The notes beneath the pieces are model-generated. The model made no database searches and was not told where the DNA came from. It saw only the letters and a list, made by a program, of their open reading frames with translations. A stretch of DNA of 57,405 bases, from NCBI GenBank assembly GCA_044892505.1, contig CM097882.1:230956596-231014000 (forward strand). Direction: 5' to 3'. Both the position numbers and the translations under genes were made by a program. The stretch comes from Schmidtea nova. Its lineage: Eukaryota. Below are positions 3,132-36,549 of this stretch, one piece after another (within the stretch, counting starts at the first letter, position 1; every line of letters starts with the position of its first letter).

Positions 3132-3290
3132 NNNNNNNNNNNNNNNNNNNNNNNNNNNNNNNNNNNNNNNNNNNNNNNNNNNNNNNNNNNNNNNNNNNNN
3201 NNNNNNNNNNNNNNNNNNNNNNNNNNNNNNNNNNNNNNNNNNNNNNNNNNNNNNNNNNNNNNNNNNNNNNNNNNNNNNNNNNNNNNNNNN

Positions 3291-7562: not shown

Positions 7563-7564
<2 letters not shown>
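6140..7564 (+). mobile_element. 5'-truncated PLE copy inverted relative to 3291-4690
   Basis: ORF 6288-7139 matches the RT C-half of the 627-aa ORF, with frameshifts in GIY-YIG. It ends at gataattatgata before (ATT)n. Confidence 0.92.
7432..7466 (+). ncRNA. Minimal hammerhead ribozyme copy
   Basis: Identical to 3025-3059. Confidence 0.7.

Positions 7565-7601
<37 letters not shown>
7564..7601. repeat. (ATT)n microsatellite: PLE tail and insertion site of the giant LTR element
   Basis: About 12 ATT units between the PLE end and TGTTGGG. Confidence 0.9.
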
Positions 7602-7602
<1 letters not shown>

Positions 7603-7987
7603 GTTGGGCCAGCCAAATAGAGGGAACAGTGAAATAAAAGTAGATTAATTAAAACAAAAAAGAGAAAAATAAGGTAAAAAGGGGAATATTTATTTATTAA
7701 AAGAAAGGAATAATATAGTAAAAATATAGATAAACTAAGTACAAGCTATAAATAAAAATAAATGAATTTCTAGATATTAACGGGCCCAGGAGACATCTAA
7801 AAACAAATAAAATACAAATAATAATAATTAAAACCAAATAAAAGTACTTGTTATTGAATAATTGTTTTTGAAACCCGGACCTCCAAGGAAGAATACAATC
7901 TAAAAAATAAAAATTAATTAGAATCAAAAACAATAATTAAAAACCACCATGAAGCTGGCCGAACCTGATTGGTCGATCTAGACACGA

Positions 7988-8011
7988 CTGATCAGTATAA
8001 ATACTGATCAG
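7988..8011 (+). promoter_or_regulatory. TATA box embedded in a 24-bp palindrome (LTR promoter candidate)
   Basis: CTGATCAGTAT-AA-ATACTGATCAG contains TATAAATA at 7996-8003. The copy is at 33286-33309. Confidence 0.6.
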
Positions 8012-8993
8012 ATTTTTCATAAAATTAGACCGTGTAAAAACTTAGACTTTAGTAGACTTTGTTAGAATATAGATTTTAGACTTGTGACTTTGTTTGAGAC
8101 TAAAATTTAGACTTTGCAAAAAACTTAGACTTGTGTTCAGACTAAAATTCACATTAGATTGCACATTGCCCCGACGACGATCACCGTTTAGACCGATTTT
8201 GATCAATAAATTTTCGGAATTCAATTGAGGTATTTTTGGTATATTTACGTTTATTATTTGATATCGTTGTATTCATATGTCATTATCATATTATAATTTA
8301 TTGTTTATCTCGTTATGATTTATGTTTATATTTAAACTACTTAAACTATCATATTAATCTTGCGCCGTTGGGAGCTTTAGGTTCCCAAGGTGTCCGTCCG
8401 TGGCGTGGTGCTCGAGGGCTCCACACACGGTAAAGTAATAAATAACAAAACATAATTTTATTAGTGATGGTCGAGATTTGCACATGGGACACCCAACAAA
8501 TCCGGGGAATTATTTTCCGATCATTTTAGCTACAGAGGGGACGATAATTTTTTGATAAAGCTTAAAGATATGAAAGAATTTTGTAACCGTGAGGAGGCAC
8601 GAATTGTTCACCCTCACCACAGCACAATTGCTAGATAAACGTCTAATAAACCTTAGAAAAATTATGTCGACCGCATTTGGTACACAAGAGCGTTTTTCGA
8701 ATAAGCTAGGGATACATGACGGGAGAGAGCTTCCGTTTTGAGGTGTCAATATTTTGAAAATCCAAGCAGACAAATCACCAATTTTTCGACTATAATATTG
8801 ATCGTAAACAGATAAATCTAAGTAGATACGAGAGTAACGCATACCGTAACGAACGACAGTTTTCCCTTGATTTCAGTTAAGGTCTAAGGGGTAGGCAAAT
8901 AATAAAGGCATCACGATGAGAGATAACATCTACTATAATTAATTATTGATTTAAATTGTTAACTATTATAAAATTCAGCATCGTTTTGGAATC

Positions 8994-9470
8994 ATGACTA
9001 AACATAGATACACTATCAAAAAACGACAAGAACGAGCCCGAGTTAGCCCATTAAAACCGGCTCCTTTTGAAATTCTGCAGCAAATCCATCAAAAAATGTG
9101 GGCATGGCGCCGAGAGCTTGAAACCGCCTGTCCATTTACAGTATGGGACCATCCACGGCATCACGTATGGTACCGGGGATGCGCTAGTTGGCCAATCATT
9201 CCAGATGAGGAATTTGAATCATCGCACGCCGCCTGGTTCATCCTGATGTTGGACAAAGGAGGATTCCCGAAATGTGTCATTTATTGGGGGTTCATTCCAG
9301 CCTCTACCTTCAAGGAATTGGGGTTCAAGTTCAACACAGCAATACGACCCCTTCGAGAAGCTGAGAGAACCCGTTTCCAGCAGGCCTCGTCCAATTCCAC
9401 AGGAATCCATACAAATTTGCAAATCAGATCGATATTTTCGTATCGAGGAAAAATGACCGAAGATGAATAG
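8994..9470 (+). CDS. LTR-encoded protein 1, 158 aa, unknown function
   Basis: ATG-initiated, GC-richer than its flanks, identical in the 3' LTR (34292-34768). Preceded by ttcag and followed by acctgttttt..aataaa. Confidence 0.7.
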   Translation: MTKHRYTIKKRQERARVSPLKPAPFEILQQIHQKMWAWRRELETACPFTVWDHPRHHVWYRGCASWPIIPDEEFESSHAAWFILMLDKGGFPKCVIYWGFIPASTFKELGFKFNTAIRPLREAERTRFQQASSNSTGIHTNLQIRSIFSYRGKMTEDE

Positions 9471-9788
9471 GTTGAATCAATGGCCACCTGTTTTTGAATT
9501 TAATAAATGTTTTAAAGAAGTCTGAAGTGTCTCATTTTGTTAATAGTGTTGTCATGTAGATTTAGTATTGTAGTTGTCATAGTCATTAAGAAATTGATTT
9601 ATTAATATAAAATTAGTTCAATAAATCTTTTAAACCTTCAATAATTAGATAGTTGAATAATTTTGCGAAGAACTCAATAATTAAAAACATTAGTATGCAT
9701 CTCGTTTAATAATAATAATAGTCGTTTAAATAAAATAGAATTGTTGATAGGTCCTCCAGCGAATTTATCGTTATAATATTCAGATAAC

Positions 9789-10373
9789 ATGCCGACTTCA
9801 GAAAATTCCAAGAAAATCATGGGACAAATCCAAGAGAGGAAGTTGAGGGACCAGCAGCGACAGATCAAGCGACTCACGGTCGCCAATGATGAATTGAGAG
9901 CGAAGTGGTTCTCACCCGAACAAATGAAGGACCAGTCGAAAAAACTTGAGCGAATGCAGGAAGCACTGGCCGCAACATAATTGGAACTAGATGCCGTCCA
10001 GCGAGAACTACGAAATTGCCTAAACGCAGTAACAAGAAGTTACATCGACTCCGAATTACGAGCGCTAATCCGGCCGATCACGGCTCAGCGCTGGATACAA
10101 TGCACCCACCAAGATGTCGCTTGCGGGACGGAAGAGGGAATCATCATGGCCCCCACTCTCGCAACGGAAGATTTGCCTATTTTTCTCAGTGATCCCCCGA
10201 GAACAATAGCGTCAGCACCGGTCATAAACCAACAGTTTCGAAAACATCGAATGGGATCGCGACAGCGTCGTCGTCGCCGAGAATTTGCGAAGCGCCTGGA
10301 CGAACAAATCTACCACTTGAACTCCTTAACCGAAGCGGAGTTGATTCAGGAGATTAGTCTGGAATTCGCTTAG
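9789..10373 (+). pseudogene. LTR-encoded protein 2 (coiled-coil, Arg-rich C-terminus), interrupted by TAA at 9978-80 in this LTR
   Basis: The 3' LTR copy (35087-35671) is an open 194-aa ORF with ACT AAA where this copy has ACA TAA. Confidence 0.75.
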
Positions 10374-10932
10374 GAAAACATCCATGTAAAATAACAACCT
10401 GTTTTTAATATTTTAATAAAAGTATTTTCTGTGTAAATTTTGTCTCTCATCGTGTGATTTCACTAAATAAAATAAATGACTCAATCATAGAAATGGAAAA
10501 TCCCATCAATATTTTTCTCAGACCGACCGTTTCTACGCAGAGACTGATTAATTACATTGTAGCTCGATTAAGGAAAGTCATTGGGAAAGGTGTATGATAG
10601 ATCATAAGGATATGTAGTACAAAATTCAGTAGGAAACGAACATCCATAGAATGTAAATGCGTAAGACCTTCTATCGGCAGCAAGGACCCGAGGGAAGATA
10701 AATGGGGAGTAGTTTTGGCAACAAAGCTCACCTGCCCATCAGTTTTCCACCACCGTATGCAGTACCAACTTGACTAGTAGGGAATAGTCAAGGGCATACG
10801 CGTGTAGTAGTCATGTTATGTATGGTTATGGGCGTGGAATCCCTAGTATACGTACTCACCAATAGTCGTTCAATTAATGATTAACTATTTATTTGAATTA
10901 CTTAAAACCCACCCATAAACCCAGCATAAATT

Positions 10933-10950
10933 TGGGGGCTCAGCCGGGAT
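10933..10950 (+). promoter_or_regulatory. Primer binding site, tRNA-Pro type
   Basis: TGGGGGCTCAGCCGGGAT matches the classical tRNA-Pro PBS TGGGGGCTCGTCCGGGAT at 16/18 and lies just after the LTR end. Confidence 0.88.
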
Positions 10951-11255
10951 CAACTTTGTTTTTATGCGGAAAAGGTGAACCCAATGACAACAGAGAAACT
11001 TAAAATCAGAATTTTGTGAGTAGAAATAGTAACCGAAAGAGTAAACGAGATAAAAGTGAGTTGCGTGGAAATAGATAATTACAAACAGAGAATTAAAACA
11101 AATTAGTAGATAAATTGAACAAATGCATTCATACATAACAGGTCGGGACGACAATTTACCGAAACACGGGGGGAGGCTGTAAAACTGCCAGAAACGAAAC
11201 ACAGTACTACTTTTCGAATAATATTAACACAGTAATTAAATAAATTATCTAGGAA

Positions 11256-11717
11256 ATGGAGGAAAAACTGAAAGAAATCGAAGAATTTTTCAACACCGAG
11301 AACGATACATTTGAGACAGTCTGCGAAAAAATAACCCGAATAAGAGCATCCGAATATGAGGAACCTACGACACAAACTGAGGAAACAACTGAGTTAATAA
11401 AAATCATAGATAAAGTAAATAAACTCGATATAAATACGCGATATAAATGGTACAAAGCACGATTAGAGGATGCCGAGTTGAATATCAGATGCCGACATAT
11501 AGAACAGCAGTTAAACCTAACTTATAACCGATGGATGTCGCAAGGGGTCGAGGCAGCAAAACAATATAAACGATGTTACATATGTGAAGACAGTGAAATC
11601 CAAATAATGTTTCTACCATGCGGACATTTTCGATTTTGTAAAAACTGTGCGAATAAGTGTGATGAGTGCCCCATGTGCAATTTCTCTGTAACTGATAGAA
11701 TTGTAGTTTATTTATAA
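11256..11717 (+). CDS. 153-aa protein with a C-terminal IAP/MDM2-type RING finger, no BIR
   Basis: CYIC..IMFLPCGHFRFCKNCANKCDECPMC...RIVVYL at the extreme C-terminus. Confidence 0.85.
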   Translation: MEEKLKEIEEFFNTENDTFETVCEKITRIRASEYEEPTTQTEETTELIKIIDKVNKLDINTRYKWYKARLEDAELNIRCRHIEQQLNLTYNRWMSQGVEAAKQYKRCYICEDSEIQIMFLPCGHFRFCKNCANKCDECPMCNFSVTDRIVVYL

Positions 11718-12193
11718 TAAATATTTAGAGTGTGTTAATATATTGTATCGAATGACAAAGTCGGGGGAGCAATCAACAATGTTAATTAATTTTTGAGCTA
11801 CTGTCAAGTAGTCCGTTAAGCACCCATTGGGAGGTACCAGTTGATCAACCCACTCGGGGTATATAGAAAGGGGCCAATCGCAAATGTTGGAAAGCTTTTG
11901 TGATGTGATTGATCACCACATCCCGCATTAGTAGACCAACGCGATCTTTTTGTATATTTTGGTTGGGGAGAGAAATAGGGAAAACCACGATGAGTTAAGA
12001 TGCGCGCAGAGAAAATAATAAAAATTGAAGTAGAACTGATCAGCGAAAGAATTAGTAATAAAACAAAGAATCGAGGAATTATAAAGGAAAATAAGAGGTG
12101 CATAATCAGCTCGCATGAAATTGAGAGAACTCAGCTGAGAAATTGTAGTCGCTAGCGAAGTTAAGAATTACGATTAACCGGTTAAGGAAAATT

Positions 12194-12407
12194 TATTAGA
12201 ATTTGTCCCTTGAAACAAAGGGTTATCAGCGGTTTGTCCCTTGAAACAAAGGGTTATTAGAATTTGTCCCTTGAAACAAAGGGTTATCAGCGGTTTGTCC
12301 CTTGAAACAAAGGGTTATTAGAATTTGTCCCTTGAAACAAAGGGTTATCAGCGGTTTGTCCCTTGAAACAAAGGGTTATTAGAATTTGTCCCTTGAAACA
12401 AAGGGTT
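12194..12407 (+). repeat. Tandem array 1: 7 x 30/31-bp units (61-bp dimer)
   Basis: tttgtcccttgaaacaaagggttat followed alternately by tagaa or cagcgg. Confidence 0.95.
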
Positions 12408-12640
12408 GAGGCCAAAGAGCCATATTGAATGACCTAGCTAGGCGTTATTGAGAGATATGATTTAAGGCCAATAGAGCCATTTGAGATAATTGAGATATGA
12501 TTTAAGGCCAATAGAGCCATTTGAGATAATTGAGATATGATTTAAGGCCAATAGAGCCATTTGAGATAATGAGATATGAATTTGAGGCCATAAGAGCCAT
12601 TTGAGATAATTGATATTAATTTGAGGCCAAAGGAGCCAAT
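12408..12640 (+). repeat. Tandem array 2: ~40-bp units
   Basis: gagatatgatttaaggccaatagagccatttgagataatt, about 5 copies with degenerate ends. Confidence 0.9.
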
Positions 12641-12654
12641 AGGGATATCCGGAT

Positions 12655-12915
12655 ATATAGTAACGGAGGGAATATAAGCCCAGGGTTACAATTGTTGAGT
12701 AGCAACGGAGGGAATATAGGCCCAGGGTTGCAATTAGTTAAAATTAAAGGAAGATAGTAACGGAGGGAATATAGGCCCAGGGTTACAATCGTTTGAGTAG
12801 TAACGGAGGGAATATAGGCCCAGGGTTACAATCGTTTGAGTAGCAACGGAGGGAATATAGGCCCAGGGTTGCAAGTGATAAGAAATAACAACAGAGGGAA
12901 TATAGGCCCAGAGTT
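12655..12915 (+). repeat. Tandem array 3: ~43-bp units
   Basis: tag(t/c)aacggagggaatataggcccagggtt, about 6 copies. Confidence 0.9.
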
Positions 12916-13466
12916 GTGATCGTCGACGATAAGGAGAATAGTGCGCACCGATAAAAAGAGAAATGCGAGTAAAGCTGATTATGCGACCTAAAATAATGCA
13001 TGCAAGTAGAATTGAGAAATAGGAGCTGACCGGAAAGACCGGCAGAATTAATAATTAGAGGCTAGCAGAGAGAAAGATAAAGAGATGATAAAATAATAAT
13101 CGAGTCAAATGACTCAGGGAATTAGAGCGTTCGAACGACAAATAAATTGGGAGACCGCGGGAAAAATAATTGATGTATTTTAATAACCGATAGATAATTG
13201 TTATGACTAAATAGATAATTGTGACTAGTATATAGATAATTTAAATAGACTTAAATAAAGGGGAATCTGGGAATGGGGAAAAATAATAGAAACCCAGTAA
13301 TGAGAAGTCCCGTAAAAAGGGAATAAAAGCGCAACGATAACAATAGAGTATCGTTGAAGTGACATTTGTATTTTAGATAAATCAATCAAACCAAACCAAG
13401 CAACCAAGGAAGAAAAGAATCGGAATACGATAAGACAGGAAAATTGAGTATACAAAAGTAATCCCG

Positions 13467-16400
13467 TTGAGAAAAGGAGAAAAGAGTGTCATAATAAAAC
13501 CAGCAGAGAAGAAAGTCGACAGAAAAATCAACAAAGAGGACCCAAATAGTGTGGTAATAAAACCAGCAGAAAAGAATAAAGCTACCAAGAATAATAATCA
13601 GAAAGGCCCAAAAGGAAGTAAAGCAAGGCAGATAATAATACAAAAGTCGATTATCGAAAACGATAAATTATCAGTAACAAGCAACAGTTCAAGCAACAAA
13701 GAAAATCAAGCAGAACCCGAGAGAAACCCAATAAGTGAAATAGAAGTCGACAAAACCAACAACGATTATATAGAAGAAATAGAAGACGAAGTAGAACAAG
13801 AAACAGAAAGTGACGATACCGATAACGATAGTAAAGCATCAGATAACGAATCAACAAAAGAAACTGAGATCGACCGAAATTCGAGTGACGAACCTAACAG
13901 TGAACTAGAAACAAGAGGAAACGAAAGTAAAATAACTACAGACAGCGGAATCGAAATGAGCGAACCAAGAGAAGAGATAAAAGACAAATTTTCCGGAGAA
14001 CCGTTTAATGGAGATGCGAGTAAATTGGAAACTTTCTTAAAAGAATTTGGCATATTCGTGGAAGTATGCAAGTGGAAACCAGAAACAACTATAAGCAGAA
14101 TTCAGCTATATTTAAAAGATAGCGCATTAGATCTATATTTGGAAGCAAAAAATGGAATTAATCCACCTACAAGTTGGTCAGCGATAAAGGACTTTTTCCA
14201 ACAAACCTTCGGAATAAACAAAGTATTGAATGAGGCATTTACGGAATTCTCAATGAGGAAACAAAAGATAAATGAATCGAATGCGGTATATGCAAGCGAA
14301 TTAAAAAAGTTAGCAAAGTTGATTTTCAATCAAGACAGCCCAATAAATGAGGAGTTAATGGCAGCTATCTTTGTGGGAGGATTAAGAAGACCCGACATAA
14401 GAGCGCAAGTTGGATGTCAAGGGTGTAAAACTATTGACCAAGCATTAGAAACAGCTAATAGATTTGAACTACACATGATAGGAAATGACGGTAGAATCTA
14501 TTTAGCTATGGATACAGCACAAAACGAACAAGAAGTGAACCTGAATAACCACATTCCAAATTCACAACAATTAAACCGACCACCACCGCAACGAAGGAAT
14601 GAAGGGAATAAAGTATCAAATTACGGAAATCAAAACAATTACAACCCCCAAGGACCAACGAAACAATGCAAAACATGTGGGAAATTGGGACATTGGCAAC
14701 AAGAATGTTATCAGAACTTGAATTGTGGAAAATGTGGAGTAAAAGGACATTCAGAGAGCAGATGTTATACAATAACCTGTTTTAATTGTGGACGACCTGG
14801 ACACCTATCAAGAAAGTGCGGACAAAGAAGCAATCAACGAGGAAACTGGCAGAATATTGGAAACCGACCAAACTATGGAAACCAACCAACTGGTGGAAAC
14901 CAACCGAATTATGGGAATCAGCCAAATAATGGAAACCGACCGGAATACGGAAACCAGCAAAATAATAATAATAACCAAAATAAAAACACCACTAAAGAGA
15001 TACATTTAATGCAAGAGGTTCAAAGATTGACGGAGCTGATAAACAATACAAACAGAGGAAATCCGCAAACAGGTCAACAACAAATCAACATGATGAGAAA
15101 AATAGAAAGCGAAAACGAACGATTGAATCGGGAAAGCCAAGCACGACATGCTCAGGAATGGGCAAGAATACAAAGAGAAGAGGAACAAAAACAGCAAGAA
15201 AGAGAACGACAACCTCTAAGAATTAATATGATGAGAGCAACCAATCAAACAAATACCCACGAGAAAGAGACGGTGCCAGAAATAAATCCAACAAACCTGA
15301 ATCCAACCAATAACGAAAGTCGAAAAGAAATAGTACCAGGAAGCGAAGAAGTAGAAAAAGAAATAGAGAAGGAAGTGGAAACAGAGGTAAACCAGGAAGA
15401 GAAAAAAAAGATTTGGAAAAAGGGAATGATGGTAATCCTGCCAAACGGTCATATGTTTCGATTCCAATACAACATAAAGGAAGAAATAGGAATATTGTTC
15501 AACAAAGTAAATGAAATGGCTCCAGGAGTAACGAAACTGCCCAGAGAAGCATTCCTAAAAATAGAAGGTGCACCAGAAGTAAAATTGAAATTAACAGATA
15601 CATGGGAAAACATGGGAGTAGTAGAAACAAAAAGAAATGTGATGGTAATCAAAGAAATAGAACCAGAAGGAATTCCACCGCCAGTGCGTCACGAAACACG
15701 AATCAGTCGAATATTTAAAGGGAAAATGATACGAAGACGGTTGGGAGAAATAGACGAGTTGGAACGAAAAATGAGAAAGGTCGAAGTAGTAGACGATGAG
15801 AGTAAATCAACACAAAAAACTATCGAAAATGAAACGAAACCAACGGAAAATACACCAAGTGAAATCAACCAAATAAAACACATTAACATGTTGAGAGGCC
15901 AGGCAAAGAATTTTTCAGACGACGAAGAGGATAGTGACGTCAGTAGTCTAGCCGGAGACATGCTAAACGAACCGGAAATTGAAGACAAAAAGATAGAAGT
16001 AGTAAAGACACAAGGAACTATTCAAGTAAAAGAAGACGAGATCCAGAAATTATTAGATAATACGCTAGAAGTAATATATAATGAGGAATTCATTGACAAG
16101 AAACACTATAGAAAATTCATGAGAGCGATATTACAAATGAACTATAAAGAGTGGTTACCAGGCCGGGAAGTAGAAACACTAACCCAATACGTAGGAAAAT
16201 TATTAAAAGAACCACTCCATGAATATATAATCCTAATAGAGATAAAAACATGTTTGCCAAGGATTTGGATCAAAACTCCACTCACGGAAGATATTTACCA
16301 ATGGGTAGAAGACAGATTAGGGAGCTCGTATAAGAACAAATTCCTCTATTCACAGAATGGACTAGTAAAGAAAAGGACGCATTTGATAGAAACAGGCATA

Positions 16401-19400
16401 TGGCCAGGAGAGGTGACAACATTATCGATATGCGATGATAAGAGAGAAGAGAACATACAAGAAGTAGCAAAGGAAGCGAATACGTGTTTCGAGAAGAAGA
16501 TAAAACCACGGTCAGAATATGAGAAAGGACGAATCTTACGAGGAAATCTAAACTCCATGATAGAACAAATCATCCCACAAATCAAAAAACATAGGAAGGA
16601 GTTAATGAGAAGCGAATACGAGAAGTTGAAACGATGTATCGAGTGCATACGTGACACAAGTCACACGAGATGGTCACAGATCTCATACGGAAAAGTAATT
16701 GCAAAAATGGGAAAAGCAATGTTCAGACAAGGGAAAATAACAGATCTGAAAATTGCAGTAGAGTTACCTAATGAGGATACCAAAGAAATTGAAGTGGTAG
16801 CAGACTGTACCATAAAAGAATTAGTAAATGTCCTCAACGAGACACTATTACAAAGAGAACCAGAAGAAGAATGGGAAGATGACATAATCATGAAATATAA
16901 TGAACATGTATTATGGGATCACGATGAAAGACGGCTATATAAAATTGGTATATGGGATAATCACCAAACCATCCACGTTATCAGAATGGACGATAAACCA
17001 AGAGAAACTGCTAAAGATGAGAAAAGAGAACGGGAACGACAAAAAGAAGTTGTGCATAAATTACAACAAATAGTAGACATCTATCGAAATTGGCGGATTT
17101 GGCCAGAATGGGAAGATGTATTAGAAGAACTCAATCTCAACAGACGATTACGAAAACCTGTAGAAAAACAATGGAACGAACGAGGAAAATGTTGGGAACC
17201 AAAAGCAGGCGAATACGAAGAGGAATACGAAATAGGCATAGAAGACGATCACAAACCGGAAACCGGAAGAGTCTGTATGGTAACAAGAAAAGCCATGCCA
17301 GCGGATTTAGACGGACCTGAAACAACAACCATGTGGTTGGAAAGAGAGAAACAAAAAACAGAAGAATTTGTCGAAATATTAAAAACCAATGCGCACGGCA
17401 AGAGAAAAGTAGTAAAAGGTCTCGCAGATTTTTTCGTAGTTAATGGAGAAGACATAACATGCTTTCGTAAAGTAGCAAAAGCAATCGCCGAATACAAAAG
17501 AGTTAACGAGTGGTGTCCAGAACAATTGGATCACGTAATTAAAAAATGGAGAAACCAAGAATTCTCGCAGGAATCGCCACAGAAAGTACACCTAAGAATA
17601 GTATATCCGAACCAAGAAAAGGAAGAGTTTTGGGTAGGGATAGCGGAGAAAGTTCGAGACATTAAAAGGAAATTGAGATATGAACCACCATTCCATTTAC
17701 AACACCAAGGACGATCATTAGATAACAGCTTAGAAATTGGAATAACGCCAGCGCAATTAGATATCGCAAATACATTGACAGTGGCAGCAATAGCAGGCCA
17801 ACCATTAAAATTGAAAGAGGAAAAGAAACCAAAAGGAAGTATGAGTACGCCGAGCCCAATGAAATCGGTAATGACTCCAGGAACAAGCTCAGAACAAGCT
17901 AGAACAACACCAAGAGAGACAAGAGAAAGAACACCACCAGAACCATACGATGTAGACGAAATTTTTACAGATAGCGATGATATGTTAGAGGAGTTAATAG
18001 AGCTAACAAAAGAGAAAGATGATAATATTTTCGAAAGAATTCAAGAATTACCAACAGCAATACCGGTAACCAACACCGAAGATGAAGTTGAACAAGAAAT
18101 AATCATCGAAGAAGTAAATGAAATAGCAGAAGAGGAAGCAAGGAGGGCAAATGTAGAAAATGTACAATTCACACAAGAAATGGAAAGATGGTTAGAAGAA
18201 AGAGCCAATGAACCAAGAGACGTCACAGAAGAAACTGGACGAGAAACAAGATTAGTAGAAACGGGCACGACAATGGACAAACGACCTAGAGGTAGACCCA
18301 AGATGGATCCAGCAAATGTAATTATAAAATCAAGAGAGGAAAAAAGACGGGATCAATGGGATTTGTGTCTAAAGAAACTAAATAAAATAGCCGAAACGAA
18401 AGAAAAAGAAACAACACAAACATACCAAGGCGAGGAATGGATATCAAAGATGTTAATGGAAATACTGGCAATAATCGATCCGGAATTAAAGAAATGGTGG
18501 AGAATAAACGAAATAAGCGAAAGGGCGAAATCACTGCATAGCGCCATCGCACCAATCCTACCAGAATTAATAAAAGAGAAGACAAGGTCAAACCACCTAG
18601 ATTGGCAAGGAACCACGATGTTGATAAAGAAGTTAACGGAAGGAGCAGAGACGGATAACAAATATTTAATAGCTATGGCATACACCATTTACAATCTGCT
18701 GACACTGAGTAGAGGTCGACTGAAACCCACAGCACTTGAAAGACATATAAAGAATACAGCCAAAATTATAGAGAAGGAAATAGAACCGTACATCATCAAT
18801 AAAGGAGGATGGGAGACATTCACAAAAACAAACCAAAAGAAAAACCAATCCAAAAATATGAAAAAGAAATTCGAAGAGATATTGGGAGAATTGGAAAAGG
18901 AAAAGTCGGGAACAGGAAACGGGAAATCATCACTAAACTTGAGTTCTATTATTATGATGATGTTAATATGGATGATTAGTACTGACGGCGCAACAGCATT
19001 TGAAGTATTCGATTGCGATCAAATGGCATTAGGTGAAAAATACTCATTACGAGGGACAGAACAATGTAAAGACGCAACCCCAACGGAGCTAAAAACATTA
19101 AAAAAGAGACAATTATACCACGTATATCAGGAAGCTGAACTGATAAGAACAATGGTCAGGGAATGCAAAGTTTATAAAACCAGATTTGCTTTTTATTGTG
19201 GACACCGCCATTATTCAGCAATCGTGATGCCAGGAACGGAAAGAGAATCAGTAATGCTGCAAGGAGAAGACTGTGAAAAATTATTCAAACATGGAGAAGT
19301 AGAGACCAGAGATAGAGTAAAGATAAGAGGAAAAACGGGAGTAATATTACAACAAACATACTATGTAGCAGGAGCTATTACGGGAGGAGAAGGGTATTGT

Positions 19401-20147: not shown

Positions 20148-20850
20148 GAGGTCATGTATGTATACATATGTAAAAAGACAAACGCGAAAGTAGCGACAAT
20201 GACAAAATTACAACCAGGTCAGTGTACTAACGAACTAGAAATCGAATATAAAGGGAAAGTGAGATATGTACAACCAGTGACAAGAATCATAAATCCAATA
20301 AGCTTCGAACCAAATCCTTTCAATTGCAGCAACGCATATGGACCACTATACCAAAGGCCAGACGGGAATTGGGTTATGTTTCCGTCAAGAACAGAGGTAC
20401 CAGCACCAAGAGAATTTGAATTAATGCAACTATCAAAAGGAAGAAAATTTAAAGACGTAGATGTAAGCAATATGGGATTCTATAGTGCAAAAGATTTAGA
20501 GGCAGCAAGACAAAACATACTATTTCCAGCAAGACGAGAAGCGGTGTTATCCAGTATTGTAACAATAACAGGAGGAACAAATTACCAAGGTGGACCAAAT
20601 TACGAATTATTATTGTCACCAGCCCACTTTAAGAAGGCAACGGAAAACATGATGAAAGCGATGTGGGGAAGATTTTTAATATTTGGACAAATGATGGCAG
20701 GAATACTTGGTGTTATACTAATTATACAAATAATACGGGTAATAATAACGCAAATGTTAGCCTGTTTTGACATCTATAAAAGAGAAAAGAAAGTAAATTG
20801 GAAATTGGTGGTAGGATTCTTACCATTTTTGGCTAAAACAATGGTATTAC
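18933..20850 (+). other. env: Env: chuvirus-like (class III, gB-related) fusion glycoprotein with internal signal peptide and TM
   Basis: SSIIMMMLIWMISTDGATA followed by FEVFDC..YSL..C, FYCGHRHYS, G.CQGATY, CG..LETNYPGIF, (G)EVMY..C and C.NEL...Y. TM FLIFGQMMAGILGVILIIQII at ~20673-20770. Confidence 0.8.
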
Positions 20851-28907: not shown

Positions 28908-29032
28908 GAGGCGGGATATGACTGTAAATAATAGTGTAAATAACAATGCATTATCGTAATAGTATGGGTATCGATATTATAAAAATATAAAAAGAGAAAT
29001 CGAGAAAACGATTAATGTATATAATTTAGAAA

Positions 29033-29389
29033 ATGAACGAACAGGAAGAAATAGCAGAAACTACTATGGCTATGCGATGGAAAGCCCAGTGTGACATGTT
29101 AATACGAACAATCAACTCACTACAAAATCAGTTAATTGAGAAACAGAATTTGTTATCCGAAAGTTATAATAATAGTTTTGAACAACTCCACAGAATCGAG
29201 GAGCAACAGAGATTGATAACGCAACTTACCAGAGAGAATCAAGTAATGAGCGACATAAATCAGAGACAAGCAATAGAGATAGACCGTTTAACAATGGGAG
29301 AGACAGAAGAAGCAGAGGATGGATGGACAAATTGGGCAATAAACAGATCAGAAAACGACCCAGAACCAGATTCAACAAACGAGCCGTAG
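29033..29389 (+). CDS. 118-aa coiled-coil accessory protein
   Basis: ATG ORF with heptad-like Q/E/L content, flanked by AT-rich spacers. Confidence 0.65.
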   Translation: MNEQEEIAETTMAMRWKAQCDMLIRTINSLQNQLIEKQNLLSESYNNSFEQLHRIEEQQRLITQLTRENQVMSDINQRQAIEIDRLTMGETEEAEDGWTNWAINRSENDPEPDSTNEP

Positions 29390-29479
29390 ATAAATAAAGC
29401 GAAAAATTGTAAATATGTAAAACAAAAACAAGAAAAATCAAAAAATAAATAACAAATCAAGTGTATATATCATTGTAGA

Positions 29480-30862
29480 ATGAATACAGAAGGAAAAGCC
29501 GAAGAGCGGATAATCGAAATTTTGAGAGCCGAGAACAGGAAATGGAGTCAGAGACTCACTTGTGTAAATTGTAAAAACAAAATATTGAAACCAAGACAAA
29601 CCCTATGCGGATGCAGAGTATGTACCAAATGCATACACGAGTTAAGTATGAAAAGACCACCAGAATGTCCAGAATGCAAAGAAGGACAAATAAAATTCGA
29701 AGAAACCGGACCAGATAGAGCAACTCAGAGAGAAATCATGAACACGAAAACCGAATGTATAAATCAACCATGTATATGACAAGGACAAATACGCGATCTC
29801 GAGAACCATCTGGAGAACTGCGAAGAGAAGAGAACTGAATGTAACAAATGCCAACAAAAAATAACTATAAAGAATAAAGAGCAGCACAAAGATGAATGTA
29901 AAGAAGAGGAAAGTCTATGCGAATATTGTGGAACTCGAGAAACGAGGAGAAAGATCGAAGAAGAACACCTGAATGTAAAAGAGGAGAAAGTATGTAGACA
30001 ATATGTAGGAATATGTGCAAACGAATGCGAGATAACGGTAGAAGTAAAATTACAAGAACATTGGAAAGTGTGCACGGAGAAACCAAGGGAATGTCCTTAT
30101 AACAAACAGGGATGTATGGAGAAAAGAACGCAAAAAACCATGAAACAACATCTGGAGGAAGCATTGCTAAAGCATGCGGAAATGACAAACGAAGCAACAA
30201 AAGAAACCGAACAAACAATCAAAAAATTAGAAAGAGAAATAGAGTCACACAAGATAATGGTAAACCTACTGTTGGAAACCAGAGAGCAATTCGAACTAAC
30301 ACGAGAAAAGATGGAGGAAAAGATAAAAGCTATCGAAGAATTGGCTAAAGGAATGAAAATCCAGTACAACAAACTCACCCAGGATACCGAGGAAAAGTTA
30401 CCAATCGCACCATATGTGTGGAAAGTGACAGATTTTAGAGACAAATTAACAGAGGCCAGAAATATGACGAAAACAGCAGTAATAAGCCCACCATTTTATT
30501 TATGGAGAAACGGAGCTAAAGTGAGATTGAAGCTATACCCAAATGGAGACGGAAGAGGACGAGGAACACATGTGTCAATATTTTTCTCGCTATGTAAAGG
30601 GGAATACGACGACCTAGTAGAATGGCCCTTGAAAGTAGGAGTCATTGTAAGAATCAGAAGTGTAACAAAACCAGTAGAAAAATTCTTTGAGACAGAGAAA
30701 CATGCGAGTACGAGCGAGAAACCAACCACAGAATGTGGATTAGCAGCGGGAGAACCGATGTTTATAACGAAAGAAAGCCTATGGGAACGATTATATGCAG
30801 ACACCCTATACATAGAAATGGAAAGGAATGAGAAAGCGGATAGAAAAGGATGGTTGACGTAA
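29480..30862 (+). pseudogene. TRAF: TRAF-family protein (RING, TRAF zinc fingers, coiled coil, MATH), 460 codons with one in-frame TGA at 29777-79
   Basis: ORFs 29480-29779 and 30068-30862 are in one frame, and I found no other stop between them. MATH motif YVWKV..F...SPPFY...LYPNGDGRGRGTHVSIFF..GEYD..EWP. The TGA sits at the Trp of C.W.G. Confidence 0.9.
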
Positions 30863-30977
30863 CAAGAAAAGTGATCATGTAAATAATATGTACAGTTAAA
30901 TACCCAAAAATTATTATATAAACAAAAATAACTGATATATAAACCGATTAAAAAATTCTTTTTCTGTAATTATAGCA

Positions 30978-32039
30978 ATGGGAAATATCGAAGTATGCTT
31001 ACAGGAAATTACGATGCATCAAGCAGAAGCGATTAGCGATCATCTAGAACAGATCGAAATATGGGTCAATGCATATTATAGAAAGCAGGAGAAGGTAGAG
31101 AGACAAGCCGAATTATTAAAAGAAGCGGAAAGATCAAGTCAAAGAAGTCGAGAAAAAATAGAAGAAGTATACAAAATGCTAAAACAACAAAAGGAATATT
31201 ACCAGGGAATGATGAAAGAGCGACGAGAGGAAAGAGACAGACAGCAGATGGAAACAGAACACAAGATGTATTCGATTACAGAACAAGCAAGATACTGGAA
31301 GAAAGAAGCGAAAGAATCTTACGAAAAAGCTAGAGAAATAATAGAACGGACAGCTTATAGTGATGACTGGAAGTTATATAAAGAGATCGATGAACTAAAA
31401 GACGAGTTAGAGCAAAAAATCAACCAGGAAGTGTTAAATAAAAGATGGAATACAAAAAGACAGCAATTTATCCGCGAACAAGCAAAGGAAATTAAAGGAC
31501 TAACCTATCAAGTTCAAAGAATGGGAGAAGAACTAGCTAATCAAGAACAACTGAAAACTATGCTCACCGGAATATGGAATCAGAAAGAAGAAGAGATGAA
31601 GAGAGATATAAATGGTTACCAAGGAGTGATTACCCAGAAGAAAATAGAGCTAAAAAGAACCAGAGAAAGGTTAAAGGAAGAGAAACAAAGTTATGAGGAA
31701 AATTTAACAAATTTGATGAAAGAAAACGAAGAATTGAAACAGAAACGAGTAACAGTATCGGTAATACCTAAAGAAGCAAGTATAACGGCAGCCGTAACAA
31801 AAATGATGAAAGAAGACGAACAAAAGACAAAAGTAATCGAATTAGAAAAGCAAATAGAAACATTAACAGAACAAGCAAATTACCTAGAATATTGGCTGGA
31901 CGAGGAGATCCAGATATCTCACATGTATCGAGATGAAGTCGAAATGTGGAGGAGCAGGGTTGTTTGGATACCACTCCCTACGAACCAGGTAGAACCTCAG
32001 GACGAAGGTTTCTACGAACCAAACGAGACGATTGTGTAA
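30978..32039 (+). CDS. 353-aa coiled-coil accessory protein
   Basis: Long E/K/Q-rich ATG ORF. Confidence 0.75.
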   Translation: MGNIEVCLQEITMHQAEAISDHLEQIEIWVNAYYRKQEKVERQAELLKEAERSSQRSREKIEEVYKMLKQQKEYYQGMMKERREERDRQQMETEHKMYSITEQARYWKKEAKESYEKAREIIERTAYSDDWKLYKEIDELKDELEQKINQEVLNKRWNTKRQQFIREQAKEIKGLTYQVQRMGEELANQEQLKTMLTGIWNQKEEEMKRDINGYQGVITQKKIELKRTRERLKEEKQSYEENLTNLMKENEELKQKRVTVSVIPKEASITAAVTKMMKEDEQKTKVIELEKQIETLTEQANYLEYWLDEEIQISHMYRDEVEMWRSRVVWIPLPTNQVEPQDEGFYEPNETIV

Positions 32040-32121
32040 ATAAAGCGGAAAATATATTTTTGTAAATAATTGTATGAAATGTAGTGTCAAATTGTATTGA
32101 CCTATCTGTAAAGAAAACAGT

Positions 32122-32694
32122 TTGAAAAAGCTCAGAATACCGATATTCCTATACCTAATAACAATCACCCTACAAAGAGAAGATCTTCAACTCACAGAGA
32201 AGGAGCTACGAGCCCTACCCGAGAAAACCTATCAAGAGCTAGATAAACTAATCAGCGAAGCAACACAAGAAATCACCCAACTTCAACAGATAACATTAGA
32301 CAACCCAAACGATGAAAAATTTCAACAGGTCCTATACGAACATCGAATCAAATTGAAAACAATCAGAAAAACCCTAAAAGAAGGTCGAGAACCCATAAAA
32401 AGCTTAGCCCAAGCAGAGATAGAATATCAAGAAAAATGGATCATCGCAATTATAATAATCCTTGCACTCAGCGTGACCATTATCGCGATCACAATCCTCA
32501 TAACATCCTACCGAGTAAAGATCCTAAAACAAAAACAAGTCATCTTGAATCGAACAACAATACCAGATATCAGAACCCAAAAACGAATGAGAAAACATCT
32601 CAACCGAATCCAAAGCCTCTACGAACTACGAACAATCAGCGAAAGAACCCCAATCCAATCCAATACCAATCATGAAATCAAAGAGCTGGTGTAA
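32122..32694 (+). CDS. 190-aa predicted membrane protein (signal-like N-terminus, TM WIIAIIIILALSVTIIAITILI), TTG start
   Basis: Open frame. (M)KKLRIPIFLYLITITLQ looks like a signal peptide but the first codon is TTG. Confidence 0.6.
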   Translation: MKKLRIPIFLYLITITLQREDLQLTEKELRALPEKTYQELDKLISEATQEITQLQQITLDNPNDEKFQQVLYEHRIKLKTIRKTLKEGREPIKSLAQAEIEYQEKWIIAIIIILALSVTIIAITILITSYRVKILKQKQVILNRTTIPDIRTQKRMRKHLNRIQSLYELRTISERTPIQSNTNHEIKELV

Positions 32695-32868
32695 AACTGA
32701 TAAACTACATTCACTTTATGTATGATCCACGTACAATTAACAATAATATAACTTTGTGCTTAAGTATAAAAACTTATCACCTTATGTGATTCTTTGTGTA
32801 TATGTAAATTGACATTTATCTGCTTAAATTTTATGTATGATGATATAGGTGTAAATGTATAATTAATT

Positions 32869-32899
32869 GCGGGACGCAATTTTAGGGGTCCCCGAGTGA
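32869..32899 (+). promoter_or_regulatory. Polypurine-tract region (atypical) before the 3' LTR
   Basis: gcgggacgcaattttaggggtccccgagtga followed by TGT, a gypsy-like GGGACG..TTTT..GGGG context. Confidence 0.55.
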
Positions 32900-34291
32900 T
32901 GTTGGGCCAGCCAAATAGAGGGAACAGTGAAATAAAAGTAGATTAATTAAAACAAAAAAGAGAAAAATAAGGTAAAAAGGGGAATATTTATTTATTAAAA
33001 GAAAGGAATAATATAGTAAAAATATAGATAAACTAAGTACAAGCTATAAATAAAAATAAATGAATTTCTAGATATTAACGGGCCCAGGAGACATCTAAAA
33101 ACAAATAAAATACAAATAATAATAATTAAAACCAAATAAAAGTACTTGTTATTGAATAATTGTTTTTGAAACCCGGACCTCCAAGGAAGAATACAATCTA
33201 AAAAATAAAAATTAATTAGAATCAAAAACAATAATTAAAAACCACCATGAAGCTGGCCGAACCTGATTGGTCGATCTAGACACGACTGATCAGTATAAAT
33301 ACTGATCAGATTTTTCATAAAATTAGACCGTGTAAAAACTTAGACTTTAGTAGACTTTGTTAGAATATAGATTTTAGACTTGTGACTTTGTTTGAGACTA
33401 AAATTTAGACTTTGCAAAAAACTTAGACTTGTGTTCAGACTAAAATTCACATTAGATTGCACATTGCCCCGACGACGATCACCGTTTAGACCGATTTTGA
33501 TCAATAAATTTTCGGAATTCAATTGAGGTATTTTTGGTATATTTACGTTTATTATTTGATATCGTTGTATTCATATGTCATTATCATATTATAATTTATT
33601 GTTTATCTCGTTATGATTTATGTTTATATTTAAACTACTTAAACTATCATATTAATCTTGCGCCGTTGGGAGCTTTAGGTTCCCAAGGTGTCCGTCCGTG
33701 GCGTGGTGCTCGAGGGCTCCACACACGGTAAAGTAATAAATAACAAAACATAATTTTATTAGTGATGGTCGAGATTTGCACATGGGACACCCAACAAATC
33801 CGGGGAATTATTTTCCGATCATTTTAGCTACAGAGGGGACGATAATTTTTTGATAAAGCTTAAAGATATGAAAGAATTTTGTAACCGTAAGGAGGCACGA
33901 ATTGTTCACCCTCACCACAGCACAATTGCTAGATAAACGTCTAATAAACCTTAGAAAAATTATGTCGACCGCATTTGGTACACAAGAGCGTTTTTCGAAT
34001 AAGCTAGGGATACATGACGGGAGAGAGCTTCCGTTTTGAGGTGTCAATATTTTGAAAATCCAAGCAGACAAATCACCAATTTTTCGACTATAATATTGAT
34101 CGTAAACAGATAAATCTAAGTAGATACGAGAGTAACGCATACCGTAACGAACGACAGTTTTCCCTTGATTTCAGTTAAGGTCTAAGGGGTAGGCAAATAA
34201 TAAAGGCATCACGATGAGAGATAACATCTACTATAATTAATTATTGATTTAAATTGTTAACTATTATAAAATTCAGCATCGTTTTGGAATC

Positions 34292-34768
34292 ATGACTAAA
34301 CATAGATACACTATCAAAAAACGACAAGAACGAGCCCGAGTTAGCCCATTAAAACCGGCTCCTTTTGAAATTCTGCAGCAAATCCATCAAAAAATGTGGG
34401 CATGGCGCCGAGAGCTTGAAACCGCCTGTCCATTTACAGTATGGGACCATCCACGGCATCACGTATGGTACCGGGGATGCGCTAGTTGGCCAATCATTCC
34501 AGATGAGGAATTTGAATCATCGCACGCCGCCTGGTTCATCCTGATGTTGGACAAAGGAGGATTCCCGAAATGTGTCATTTATTGGGGGTTCATTCCAGCC
34601 TCTACCTTCAAGGAATTGGGGTTCAAGTTCAACACAGCAATACGACCCCTTCGAGAAGCTGAGAGAACCCGTTTCCAGCAGGCCTCGTCCAATTCCACAG
34701 GAATCCATACAAATTTGCAAATCAGATCGATATTTTCGTATCGAGGAAAAATGACCGAAGATGAATAG
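34292..34768 (+). CDS. LTR-encoded protein 1 (3' LTR copy)
   Basis: Identical to 8994-9470. Confidence 0.7.
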   Translation: MTKHRYTIKKRQERARVSPLKPAPFEILQQIHQKMWAWRRELETACPFTVWDHPRHHVWYRGCASWPIIPDEEFESSHAAWFILMLDKGGFPKCVIYWGFIPASTFKELGFKFNTAIRPLREAERTRFQQASSNSTGIHTNLQIRSIFSYRGKMTEDE

Positions 34769-35086
34769 GTTGAATCAATGGCCACCTGTTTTTGAATTTA
34801 ATAAATGTTTTAAAGAAGTCTGAAGTGTCTCATTTTGTTAATAGTGTTGTCATGTAGATTTAGTATTGTAGTTGTCATAGTCATTAAGAAATTGATTTAT
34901 TAATATAAAATTAGTTCAATAAATCTTTTAAACCTTCAATAATTAGATAGTTGAATAATTTTGCGAAGAACTCAATAATTAAAAACATTAGTATGCATCT
35001 CGTTTAATAATAATAATAGTCGTTTAAATAAAATAGAATTGTTGATAGGTCCTCCAGCGAATTTATCGTTATAATATTCAGATAAC

Positions 35087-35671
35087 ATGCCGACTTCAGA
35101 AAATTCCAAGAAAATCATGGGACAAATCCAAGAGAGGAAGTTGAGGGACCAGCAGCGACAGATCAAGCGACTCACGGTCGCCAATGATGAATTGAGAGCG
35201 AAGTGGTTCTCACCCGAACAAATGAAGGACCAGTCGAAAAAACTTGAGCGAATGCAGGAAGCACTGGCCGCAACTAAATTGGAACTAGATGCCGTCCAGC
35301 GAGAACTACGAAATTGCCTAAACGCAGTAACAAGAAGTTACATCGACTCCGAATTACGAGCGCTAATCCGGCCGATCACGGCTCAGCGCTGGATACAATG
35401 CACCCACCAAGATGTCGCTTGCGGGACGGAAGAGGGAATCATCATGGCCCCCACTCTCGCAACGGAAGATTTGCCTATTTTTCTCAGTGATCCCCCGAGA
35501 ACAATAGCGTCAGCACCGGTCATAAACCAACAGTTTCGAAAACATCGAATGGGATCGCGACAGCGTCGTCGTCGCCGAGAATTTGCGAAGCGCCTGGACG
35601 AACAAATCTACCACTTGAACTCCTTAACCGAAGCGGAGTTGATTCAGGAGATTAGTCTGGAATTCGCTTAG
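35087..35671 (+). CDS. LTR-encoded protein 2, intact 194 aa
   Basis: Open ATG ORF with a coiled-coil N-half and an RQRRRRR basic patch. Confidence 0.75.
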   Translation: MPTSENSKKIMGQIQERKLRDQQRQIKRLTVANDELRAKWFSPEQMKDQSKKLERMQEALAATKLELDAVQRELRNCLNAVTRSYIDSELRALIRPITAQRWIQCTHQDVACGTEEGIIMAPTLATEDLPIFLSDPPRTIASAPVINQQFRKHRMGSRQRRRRREFAKRLDEQIYHLNSLTEAELIQEISLEFA

Positions 35672-36549
35672 GAAAACATCCATGTAAAATAACAACCTGT
35701 TTTTAATATTTTAATAAAAGTATTTTCTGTGTAAATTTTGTCTCTCATCGTGTGATTTCACTAAATAAAATAAATGACTCAATCATAGAAATGGAAAATC
35801 CCATCAATATTTTTCTCAGACCGACCGTTTCTACGCAGAGACTGATTAATTACATTGTAGCTCGATTAAGGAAAGTCATTGGGAAAGATGTATGATAGAT
35901 CATAAGGATATGTAGTACAAAATTCAGTAGGAAACGAACATCCATAGAATGTAAATGCGTAAGACCTTCTATCGGCAGCAAGGACCCGAGGGAAGATAAA
36001 TGGGGAGTAGTTTTGGCAACAAAGCTCACCTGCCCATCAGTTTTCCACCACCGTATGCAGTACCAACTTGACTAGTAGGGAATAGTCAAGGGCATACGCG
36101 TGTAGTAGTCATGTTATGTATGGTTATGGGCGTGGAATCCCTAGTATACGTACTCACCAATAGTCGTTCAATTAATGATTAACTATTTATTTGAATTACT
36201 TAAAANNNNNNNNNNNNNNNNNNNNNNNNNNNNNNNNNNNNNNNNNNNNNNNNNNNNNNNNNNNNNNNNNNNNNNNNNNNNNNNNNNNNNNNNNNNNNNN
36301 NNNNNNNNNNNNNNNNNNNNNNNNNNNNNNNNNNNNNNNNNNNATCATTCACTATAGCGCGGAGGCTATAAAATTTTAATAAACCTAAAAAAAGAAAAAA
36401 GAGTTCTTATTATATATAGATCAAATAATAGATGCTATTTCATGTTTAGAATGATTGTTAAAATATATCTGGCTAGAATAAATAAAAGAAGTAATTATTT
36501 TTGTGTTTGAATAAAGCCGTTAAAGAATTTGTCGAACTATACACATATA

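What the first reader, a model, noticed from the sequence alone, without database searches (positions are those of the whole stretch)
7602..36205. Giant 28.6-kb virus-like Ty3/gypsy element with env and at least 7 accessory genes
Seen: 3.3-kb LTRs, a PBS, a ~15.4-kb main frame, one gene before gag, four after pol and two inside each LTR. Known: typical Ty3/gypsy elements are 5-10 kb; giant ones exist (plant Ogre, planarian Burro). Inference: the fusogen plus many accessory genes makes this resemble a complex enveloped retrovirus. I cannot tell whether it belongs to an already described family such as Burro.
Basis: partly seen in the sequence, partly recalled or inferred. Interest (0 to 1): 0.95.

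Follow-up and report, generated by a model that had tools for sequence, protein, structure and literature searches.

The report
Giant Burro-type gypsy provirus with env
This is a real, very young, about 28.6-kb LTR retrovirus-like element whose single 5,157-codon frame carries gag, a herpes-gB/chuvirus-type fusion protein, pol and ankyrin repeats, but this layout matches the giant "Burro" elements already described in planarian flatworms, so it is a further member of a known kind and not a new kind of virus.

Summary
Two 3.3-kb LTRs are 99.88% identical. There is a tRNA-type primer-binding site and a 15.4-kb frame, with extra ORFs before gag, after pol and inside the LTRs. The frame reads gag, a 1,360-aa orphan region, env, PR-RT-RNaseH-IN, ankyrin repeats and an orphan membrane module. 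Env therefore lies in frame between gag and pol. A model of env matches herpesvirus gB and chu-like virus glycoproteins, so it is a class III fusogen. This copy has one in-frame stop inside env. Only two extra ORFs have recognisable domains: an IAP-type RING and a TRAF-like zf-TRAF plus MATH protein.

Arkhipova and Yushenova (2019) describe this architecture for planarian Burro elements, and an eLife 2026 survey reports gB-type GAG-ENV-POL elements in flatworms. Uninterrupted polyproteins with the same order, 43-50% identical in pol, occur in metagenome assemblies. The host could not be identified, and identity to the Burro references was not tested, so membership rests on architecture.

One feature appears not to have been described. 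A second module bounded by a signal-like segment and a transmembrane segment follows integrase, and 14 of 17 relatives keep its topology but not its sequence.

My notes and calls show the bounds of the ORF pieces, from which stop positions can be read. This slip is declared in the full report.

The parts
7602..10926 (+). 5' LTR. Identity with the 3' copy is readable to 10907. The end at the CA of 10926 is inferred.
   Evidence: 3306 nt, 4 mismatches. TG..CA termini form an imperfect inverted repeat.
8994..9470 (+). First LTR ORF, 158 aa, orphan. The identical copy lies at 34292-34768.
   Evidence: The open stretch exceeds the 95th percentile of shuffles. No Pfam hit and no match in relatives.
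9789..10373 (+). Second LTR ORF, 5' copy. It carries one in-frame stop. The intact 194-aa copy lies at 35087-35671.
10933..10951 (+). Primer-binding-site-like sequence starting TGG. It is complementary to a generic tRNA 3' end with CCA.
   Evidence: The tRNA species was not identified.
11256..11717 (+). Accessory ORF of 153 aa with a C-terminal IAP-type RING (E3 ligase type). No BIR domain was detected.
   Evidence: zf-C3HC4_3, E 8e-12. XIAP/cIAP RING domains, E 4e-11.
12193..12915 (.). Three tandem-repeat arrays (units of 61, 40 and 43 nt) in the leader between the RING ORF and gag.
   Evidence: Burro figures also show tandem repeats.
13434..28907 (+). Main polyprotein frame of 5,157 codons, with its first ATG at 13956. 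It has one in-frame stop, which lies inside env, and no frameshift was detected.
13956..14846 (+). Gag: a weak retrotrans_gag motif and three CCHC knuckles.
   Evidence: It is colinear with the N-termini of relatives.
14847..18938 (+). Orphan region rich in Glu and Lys between gag and env, about 1,360 aa. Only its last ~180 aa align, and only to two relatives.
18939..20888 (+). Env, a class III (gB/chuvirus-type) fusogen. It has a signal-like hydrophobic start, a Cys-rich ectodomain, a TM anchor and a short tail. One in-frame stop.
   Evidence: (PF24664).
21333..21605 (+). Aspartic protease (DTG).
22269..23321 (+). Reverse transcriptase (YIDD) and RNase H.
23646..24161 (+). Integrase: HHCC zinc domain and rve core. 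No chromodomain.
24957..26300 (+). Two blocks of ankyrin repeats downstream of IN, at 24957-25301 and 25908-26300.
26976..28907 (+). C-terminal orphan membrane module. It consists of a signal-like hydrophobic segment, about 544 aa with 17 Cys and 6 N-glycosylation sequons, a strong TM segment and a 61-aa tail.
29033..29389 (+). 118-aa ORF, acidic and orphan. Its length is marginal against chance.
29480..30862 (+). TRAF-like gene. It has a weak RING-like part, zf-TRAF (29987-30151) and MATH (30413-30820). One in-frame stop if read as one gene.
30978..32039 (+). 353-aa ORF, highly charged and orphan.
32101..32694 (+). 197-codon open stretch with a strong TM-like segment but no ATG ahead of it.
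32900..36205 (+). 3' LTR, readable part only. It continues into the N run 36206-36343.

Best explanation
The region is one recently integrated copy of a giant Ty3/gypsy-type endogenous retrovirus-like element of the Burro kind.

Shown: the anatomy. Two near-identical 3.3-kb LTRs flank a leader with a tRNA-type PBS, an IAP-RING gene and tandem repeats. One 5,157-codon frame follows, encoding Gag, an orphan acidic region, a class III fusogen, PR-RT-RNaseH-IN, ankyrin repeats and a C-terminal membrane module. After it come a TRAF-like gene and orphan ORFs that reach into the LTR.

Inferred: how it works. The 5' LTR drives a genomic RNA, and a host tRNA primes reverse transcription at the PBS. PR cuts the polyprotein and IN inserts the DNA copy. 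Env starts with a conserved internal signal-like segment and ends with a TM anchor. It can therefore be threaded into the ER lumen while Gag and Pol stay in the cytosol, either from the full polyprotein or from a spliced RNA. That would give particles a gB/chuvirus-type fusogen. The RING, TRAF-like and ankyrin parts probably act on host ubiquitin, apoptosis or NF-kB-type signalling.

This particular copy cannot make full-length Env, because env carries one in-frame stop.
For: LTR pair 99.88% identical over 3306 nt. PBS-like site. One frame with a single stop.

Domain order from Pfam: CCHC, PF24664, RVP, RVT_1, RNase H, integrase, Ank. Catalytic motifs are present.

The env model has pLDDT 73. 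It matches more than 40 herpesvirus gB chains at probability 1.00 and E 1e-8 to 1e-6. It matches chu-like, qin, xinmo and nya virus glycoproteins at E 1e-23 to 1e-17. There are 11 invariant cysteines across 16 sequences.

Fifteen metagenome polyproteins show the same gag-env-pol order in one uninterrupted frame, 43-50% identical in pol and 30-37% in env. All 15 have a hydrophobic segment at the env start.

Composition is uniform across the internal region (A 43-45%, GC 36-39%), and no part of it repeats elsewhere in the window.

The published Burro description matches point by point: more than 30 kb in total, a polyprotein of about 4,900-5,140 aa, Gag with 2-3 knuckles, env in frame between gag and pol with hits to mononegavirus glycoproteins, ankyrin, MATH_TRAF either in the polyprotein or as an accessory ORF, and tandem repeats. 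The GAG-ENV-POL order with gB-type ENV is reported for Platyhelminthes.
Against: The host is unknown. No protein more than 50% identical was found, and look-ups of two neighbouring ORFs found nothing.

The BIR, BCL2-like, SUMO-like, dUTPase and Smc motifs reported for Burro were not detected by Pfam here. MATH lies downstream of pol and not upstream.

No clean polypurine tract abuts the 3' LTR. No in-frame ATG occurs in the first 174 codons of the frame.

The 3' end and the target-site duplication are hidden by Ns. Transcription, splicing, processing and particles are all inferred.
Confidence: 0.8

Rival explanations
1. Same kind of element but not Burro. It would be an independent lineage of giant GAG-ENV-POL gB-type elements from another host group, such as another flatworm order, a bryozoan or a nematode, which grew large by convergence.
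For: [quoted passage not shown] Relatives come from unnamed environmental assemblies. Several Burro motifs were not detected, and MATH sits in a different place.
Against: The size, a frame of about 5,100 codons, three knuckles, ankyrin, TRAF/MATH, a RING, leader tandem repeats and flanks of more than 70% A/T all fit the dugesiid Burro description.
Confidence: 0.15
2. Assembly artefact or nested composite. The size would come from mis-joined copies or from other elements inserted into an ordinary gypsy element.
For: An N run abuts the 3' LTR. The neighbouring 1318-7541 region shows inverted duplications around another N run.
Against: One continuous frame of 15.4 kb is colinear with uninterrupted relatives from gag through env to IN. 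Base composition is uniform, and nothing in the internal region repeats elsewhere in the window. Independent metagenome contigs carry the same order.
Confidence: 0.03
3. Env and the membrane module are relics. The family would spread only inside the genome as a retrotransposon, and the fusogen would be decaying cargo.
For: This copy has a stop in env. No expression or particle data were available here.
Against: Env keeps 11 invariant cysteines, its signal-like start and its TM anchor across relatives that are only 30-37% identical, and it is uninterrupted in 15 of them. That argues for long purifying selection on env at the family level. The near-identical LTRs show that the copy is very young, so a single stop says little about the family.
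Confidence: 0.2

Closest known systems
Burro / GYPSM1 giant gypsy-like LTR elements of dugesiid planarians (Jurka 2007; Grohme et al. 2018; Arkhipova and Yushenova 2019, PMC6431247)
   Same: Giant size. One polyprotein of about 5,000 aa that starts with Gag and CCHC knuckles. Env in frame between gag and PR, with hits to mononegavirus glycoproteins. PR-RT-RH-IN, ankyrin repeats, MATH_TRAF, RING-type motifs, accessory ORFs and tandem repeats.
   Different: No BIR, BCL2-like, SUMO-like, dUTPase or Smc motif was detected by Pfam. MATH is in an ORF downstream of pol. The fusogen is class III by fold, whereas the review linked it to gypsy/F-type Env. Sequence identity to the references was not tested.
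GAG-ENV-POL 'errantivirus' elements with HSV/gB-type ENV in Nematoda, Bryozoa and Platyhelminthes (eLife 2026, PMC13524379)
   Same: The gene order and the class III gB-type fusogen.
   Different: That screen accepted only LTR pairs 5-14 kb apart. Here the spacing is 25.3 kb, all parts are in one frame, and there are large extra domains and accessory ORFs.
Unnamed metagenome polyproteins P0026, P0032, P0035, P0037, P0044, P0049 and others
   Same: Gag, env (PF24664), PR-RT-RH-IN in one uninterrupted frame. Some carry ankyrin or ubiquitin-like inserts. They have a post-IN module bounded by two hydrophobic segments.
   Different: Only 43-50% identical in pol. They are shorter (2.6-4.1 thousand aa). 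The mid region, the tail and the accessory ORFs of this element have no match in them.
Glycoproteins of Jingchuvirales and other Monjiviricetes, and chuvirus-like glycoproteins captured by arthropod BEL/Pao and gypsy elements (Dezordi et al. 2020)
   Same: Pfam family PF24664, and they are the best structural matches.
   Different: Those are stand-alone genes of negative-strand RNA viruses or separate ORFs. No stand-alone protein close enough to share words was found.
Complex retroviruses (Retroviridae)
   Same: LTRs, a PBS, gag-PR-RT-IN, an envelope protein and accessory reading frames that reach into the 3' LTR.
   Different: Retroviral env lies after pol, is a class I fusogen and is made from a spliced RNA. 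The RT here is of the Ty3/gypsy type. This is an analogy and not membership.

Membership tests
Ty3/gypsy (Metaviridae) | LTRs with TG..CA ends, a tRNA PBS and the pol order PR-RT-RNaseH-IN | tested here: met
Burro-type giant planarian elements | Total length of about 25-30 kb or more, bounded by LTRs | tested here: met
   LTR start-to-start spacing is 25,298 nt and 28.6 kb is readable.
Burro-type giant planarian elements | One polyprotein frame of about 4,900-5,140 aa starting with Gag and 2-3 CCHC knuckles | tested here: met
   5,157 codons and three CCHC patterns. The frame has one stop.
Burro-type giant planarian elements | Env in frame between gag and PR, similar to mononegavirus fusion glycoproteins | tested here: met
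Burro-type giant planarian elements | Ankyrin repeats and MATH_TRAF, in the polyprotein or in an accessory ORF | tested here: met
Burro-type giant planarian elements | BIR, BCL2-like, SUMO-like, dUTPase and Smc or midasin-like motifs | tested here: inconclusive
   None was detected by Pfam at E up to 1-5 or by PDB sequence search. The original reports used HHpred, which is more sensitive. These motifs also vary between the described elements.
Burro-type giant planarian elements | The host is a dugesiid planarian | not testable with these tools
   The window is anonymous. The flanks are 70-76% A/T, which is compatible. Look-ups found nothing.
Burro-type giant planarian elements | Sequence identity to the Burro-1 to -4 or GYPSM1 reference entries | not tested
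GAG-ENV-POL gB-type errantivirus-like elements | Order gag-env-pol with a class III (gB-like) fold | tested here: met
Class III viral fusogens | The gB/G/gp64-type fold with a long central helix and a C-terminal TM anchor | tested here: met
   Foldseek probability 1.00 to gB. The model shows long beta hairpins followed by a 48-residue helix. A TM anchor is present. Only the piece upstream of the stop was modelled.
Retroviridae | Retroviral RT clade, with env after pol as a class I TM/SU protein | tested here: not met
   Env lies before PR and is class III. The best pol hits are gypsy-type.

The most novel reading that the evidence does not exclude
Burro-type elements and their metagenome relatives may encode two membrane glycoprotein modules within one polyprotein. 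One is the class III fusogen between Gag and PR. The other is a fast-evolving ectodomain after IN, bounded by a signal-like and a TM segment, in the classical env position. Both would be threaded into the ER through internal signal sequences, much as in flavivirus polyproteins. The second module might serve as the attachment or host-range partner of the fusogen. The evidence is hydropathy and domain content only: 14 of 17 relatives share the topology, and two carry an Ig domain there.
Probability: 0.2. Interest if true: 0.65.

Novelty: new member of a known kind. Interest (0 to 1): 0.4.

Why it matters
Burro-type elements are the largest known retrovirus-like elements. They show how far an RNA-templated genome can grow and how much host-like signalling cargo (RING, TRAF, ankyrin) it can carry.

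This copy adds three things:
- A clean, very young example.
- A structural assignment of its env to the class III gB/chuvirus type.
- Evidence that the gag-env-pol single-frame design is widespread in environmental assemblies.

It also points to a conserved second membrane module after integrase. If that module is real, it changes how the envelope of these elements should be understood.

Tried and rejected
- Word-based search for stand-alone relatives of the upstream env piece found no hit. The length window excludes polyproteins, so this blank says little.
- Sequence searches of the PDB with both env pieces, the tail, the mid region, the 353-aa ORF and the LTR ORF gave nothing usable.
- An exhaustive HMMER search with the last 667 aa found 0 hits in 1.84 billion representatives.
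- An AlphaFold model of that tail without an alignment gave pLDDT 35, so it is unusable and no fold search was run on it.
- Rfam found no family in the window, and the tRNA scan found none.
- phmmer of all accessory ORFs and orphan regions against the 132 fetched proteins gave only TRAF-like and ankyrin matches.
- Exact-protein look-ups of two neighbouring non-viral ORFs, meant to name the host, were not on record.
- The Grohme et al. 2018 paper is not held. The supplements of two other papers are not held, so no probe or species list could be used.
- Programmed readthrough as an explanation for the env stop was rejected, because all 15 aligned relatives read straight through the homologous place.
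- A dUTPase between PR and RT was rejected, because that stretch aligns to ordinary gypsy pol and has no Pfam dUTPase hit.
- A chromodomain was rejected.


Full report
ANATOMY. Two direct repeats, 7602-10907 and 32900-36205, align without gaps over 3306 nt with 4 mismatches. The 3' copy stops at an N run (36206-36343). The true 3' end and any target-site duplication are therefore hidden, and I did not try to recover them. In the 5' copy the repeat most likely ends at the CA of 10926, because the termini TG..CA form an imperfect inverted repeat. Six bases later, a 19-nt stretch starting TGG (10933-10951) is complementary to a generic tRNA 3' end with CCA. No tRNA gene lies in the window. The 5' flank is an (ATT)n microsatellite. 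The flanks are 24-30% GC, while the element is 36-39% GC and strongly A-rich on the plus strand.

MAIN FRAME. The stretch 13434-28907 is one frame of 5,157 codons with one in-frame stop. Pfam and motif scans give the following order:
- Gag, with a weak retrotrans_gag motif and three CCHC knuckles.
- An orphan Glu/Lys-rich region of about 1,360 aa.
- A viral fusion glycoprotein (PF24664).
- Aspartic protease (DTG), RT (YIDD) and RNase H.
- Integrase (HHCC and rve core).
- Two ankyrin blocks.
- A C-terminal stretch bounded by a signal-like hydrophobic segment and a strong TM segment.
The first ATG in the frame is at 13956, 174 codons into the open frame.

THE FUSOGEN. The stop lies inside env, so I searched the two pieces apart and never joined them. 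Both pieces match PF24664, at E 3e-35 and 9e-29, and cover the profile colinearly. The upstream piece aligns at 30-37% identity with the env part of 15 metagenome polyproteins, with 11 invariant cysteines. A model built on that alignment has pLDDT 73, with long beta hairpins followed by a 48-residue helix. Foldseek matched it to more than 40 herpesvirus gB chains at probability 1.00 and E 1e-8 to 1e-6. It matched predicted glycoproteins of chu-like, qin-related, xinmo and nya viruses at E 1e-23 to 1e-17, ahead of gB and rhabdovirus G. Env is therefore a class III fusogen of the Monjiviricetes/chuvirus type.

Env starts with a hydrophobic segment followed by a small-x-small motif, and it ends with a TM anchor and a short tail. 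All 15 relatives have a hydrophobic 13-mer at the same aligned place, and two of them have no Met nearby. An internal signal sequence within the polyprotein is therefore plausible. A spliced env RNA is not excluded.

RELATIVES. A search with the pol part found no protein more than 50% identical. The true relatives are unnamed proteins of 2.6-4.1 thousand aa from ENA and JGI assemblies. They are 43-50% identical over PR-RT-RH-IN and also carry PF24664. Some also have CCHC, ankyrin, ubiquitin-like or Ig domains. BLAST shows them colinear with this element from gag through env to IN in one uninterrupted frame. They read straight through where this copy has its stop. I therefore count one nonsense mutation in env and no frameshift. 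The mid region, the tail and the accessory ORFs have no match in these relatives.

ACCESSORY ORFs.
- The ORF before gag (11256-11717) ends in an IAP-type RING.
- After pol, one frame (29480-30862) holds a weak RING-like part, zf-TRAF and MATH. Its relatives are TRAF-like proteins. It has one in-frame stop if read as one gene, or three if the 119-codon stretch upstream is counted in.
- A 353-aa ORF and a 197-codon open stretch are orphans but far longer than chance allows. The 197-codon stretch has a TM-like segment but no ATG ahead of it.
- Each LTR holds two plus-strand ORFs above shuffle expectation. The second has one stop in the 5' copy only.
Two have recognisable functions.

LITERATURE. 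Arkhipova and Yushenova (2019, PMC6431247) describe the planarian Burro/GYPSM1 elements:
- Internal region up to 25 kb and total length over 30 kb.
- A polyprotein of 4,873 aa, or 5,140 aa in Dugesia tigrina.
- Gag with three or two knuckles.
- Env in frame between gag and pol, with hits to mononegavirus fusion glycoproteins.
- Ankyrin repeats, and MATH_TRAF either in the polyprotein or in an accessory ORF.
- RING, BIR, BCL2-like, SUMO-like and dUTPase motifs, and tandem repeats.
An eLife 2026 survey (PMC13524379) reports the GAG-ENV-POL order with gB-type ENV in Nematoda, Bryozoa and Platyhelminthes. It screened only LTR pairs 5-14 kb apart. BURRO1 is expressed and is under PIWI control in Schmidtea. 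Planarian genomes are more than 70% A/T. The architecture here is thus published. The differences are that several Burro motifs were not detected by Pfam, that MATH lies downstream of pol, and that env is class III by fold whereas the review linked it to F-type Env.

NEW OBSERVATION. The post-IN module (26976-28907) looks like a type I membrane protein. It has a signal-like segment, about 544 aa with 17 Cys and 6 sequons, a TM segment and a 61-aa tail. It has no homologue among 1.84 billion representatives, and its model is unusable. Yet 14 of 17 relatives show the same pair of features, a hydrophobic segment soon after IN and a strong TM 45-140 aa from the C-end. Their tails align only within subgroups. 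In two relatives an Ig domain follows the post-IN hydrophobic segment. I read this as a possible second, fast-evolving envelope component. The basis is hydropathy and domain content only.

UNEXPLAINED. There is no polypurine run of 7 nt or more in the 200 nt before the 3' LTR. The start codon of gag is uncertain, because the relatives' Gag alignments begin some 20-30 codons ahead of the first ATG.

VERDICT. The element is a new member of a known kind, the Burro-type giant gypsy elements, with confidence 0.8. Interest is 0.4.

Noticed in passing
window 26976-28907; relatives P0032, P0035, P0037, P0044, P0049, P0053, P0106 and others: After integrase the polyprotein ends in a module bounded by a signal-like segment and a strong TM segment (17 Cys, 6 sequons). 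It has no homologue anywhere. The same topology recurs in 14 of 17 metagenome relatives, and two of them have an Ig domain there.
   Followed up: partly
window 18939-18990 and the aligned place in alignment A1: A hydrophobic signal-like segment at the start of env is conserved in all 15 relatives, and two of them have no Met nearby. This suggests an internal signal sequence inside the gag-env-pol polyprotein.
   Followed up: partly
window 32700-32899: There is no polypurine run of 7 nt or more just before the 3' LTR, where a polypurine tract is expected.
   Followed up: no
window 13434-13955: The main frame is open for 174 codons before its first ATG. The relatives' Gag alignments begin ahead of that ATG, so the start of gag in this copy is uncertain.
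   Followed up: partly
window 1318-7541: Next to the 5' LTR lies a block of inverted and direct duplications, 97-99.6% identical, of an RT-bearing element around the N run 3132-3290. It has a 627-aa RT ORF on the minus strand. It may be a DIRS/PLE-like element or an assembly palindrome.
   Followed up: partly
window 12193-12915: The leader holds three tandem-repeat arrays, including 3.5 perfect copies of a 61-nt unit. Their function is unknown.
   Followed up: no
window 41056-41207 and 44747-44896: Short dispersed repeats of about 150 nt, 82-93% identical to the ends of the neighbouring element at 1259-1423 and 7427-7589.
   Followed up: no
window 54908-55876: A cluster of direct and inverted copies of a unit of about 230-290 nt, 84-97% identical, close to several N runs.
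   Followed up: no
P0037 residues 771-835 and 2122-2332: In this relative a ubiquitin-like domain lies between gag and env, and the ankyrin repeats lie between env and PR. Accessory domains therefore move around within the family's polyprotein.
   Followed up: partly
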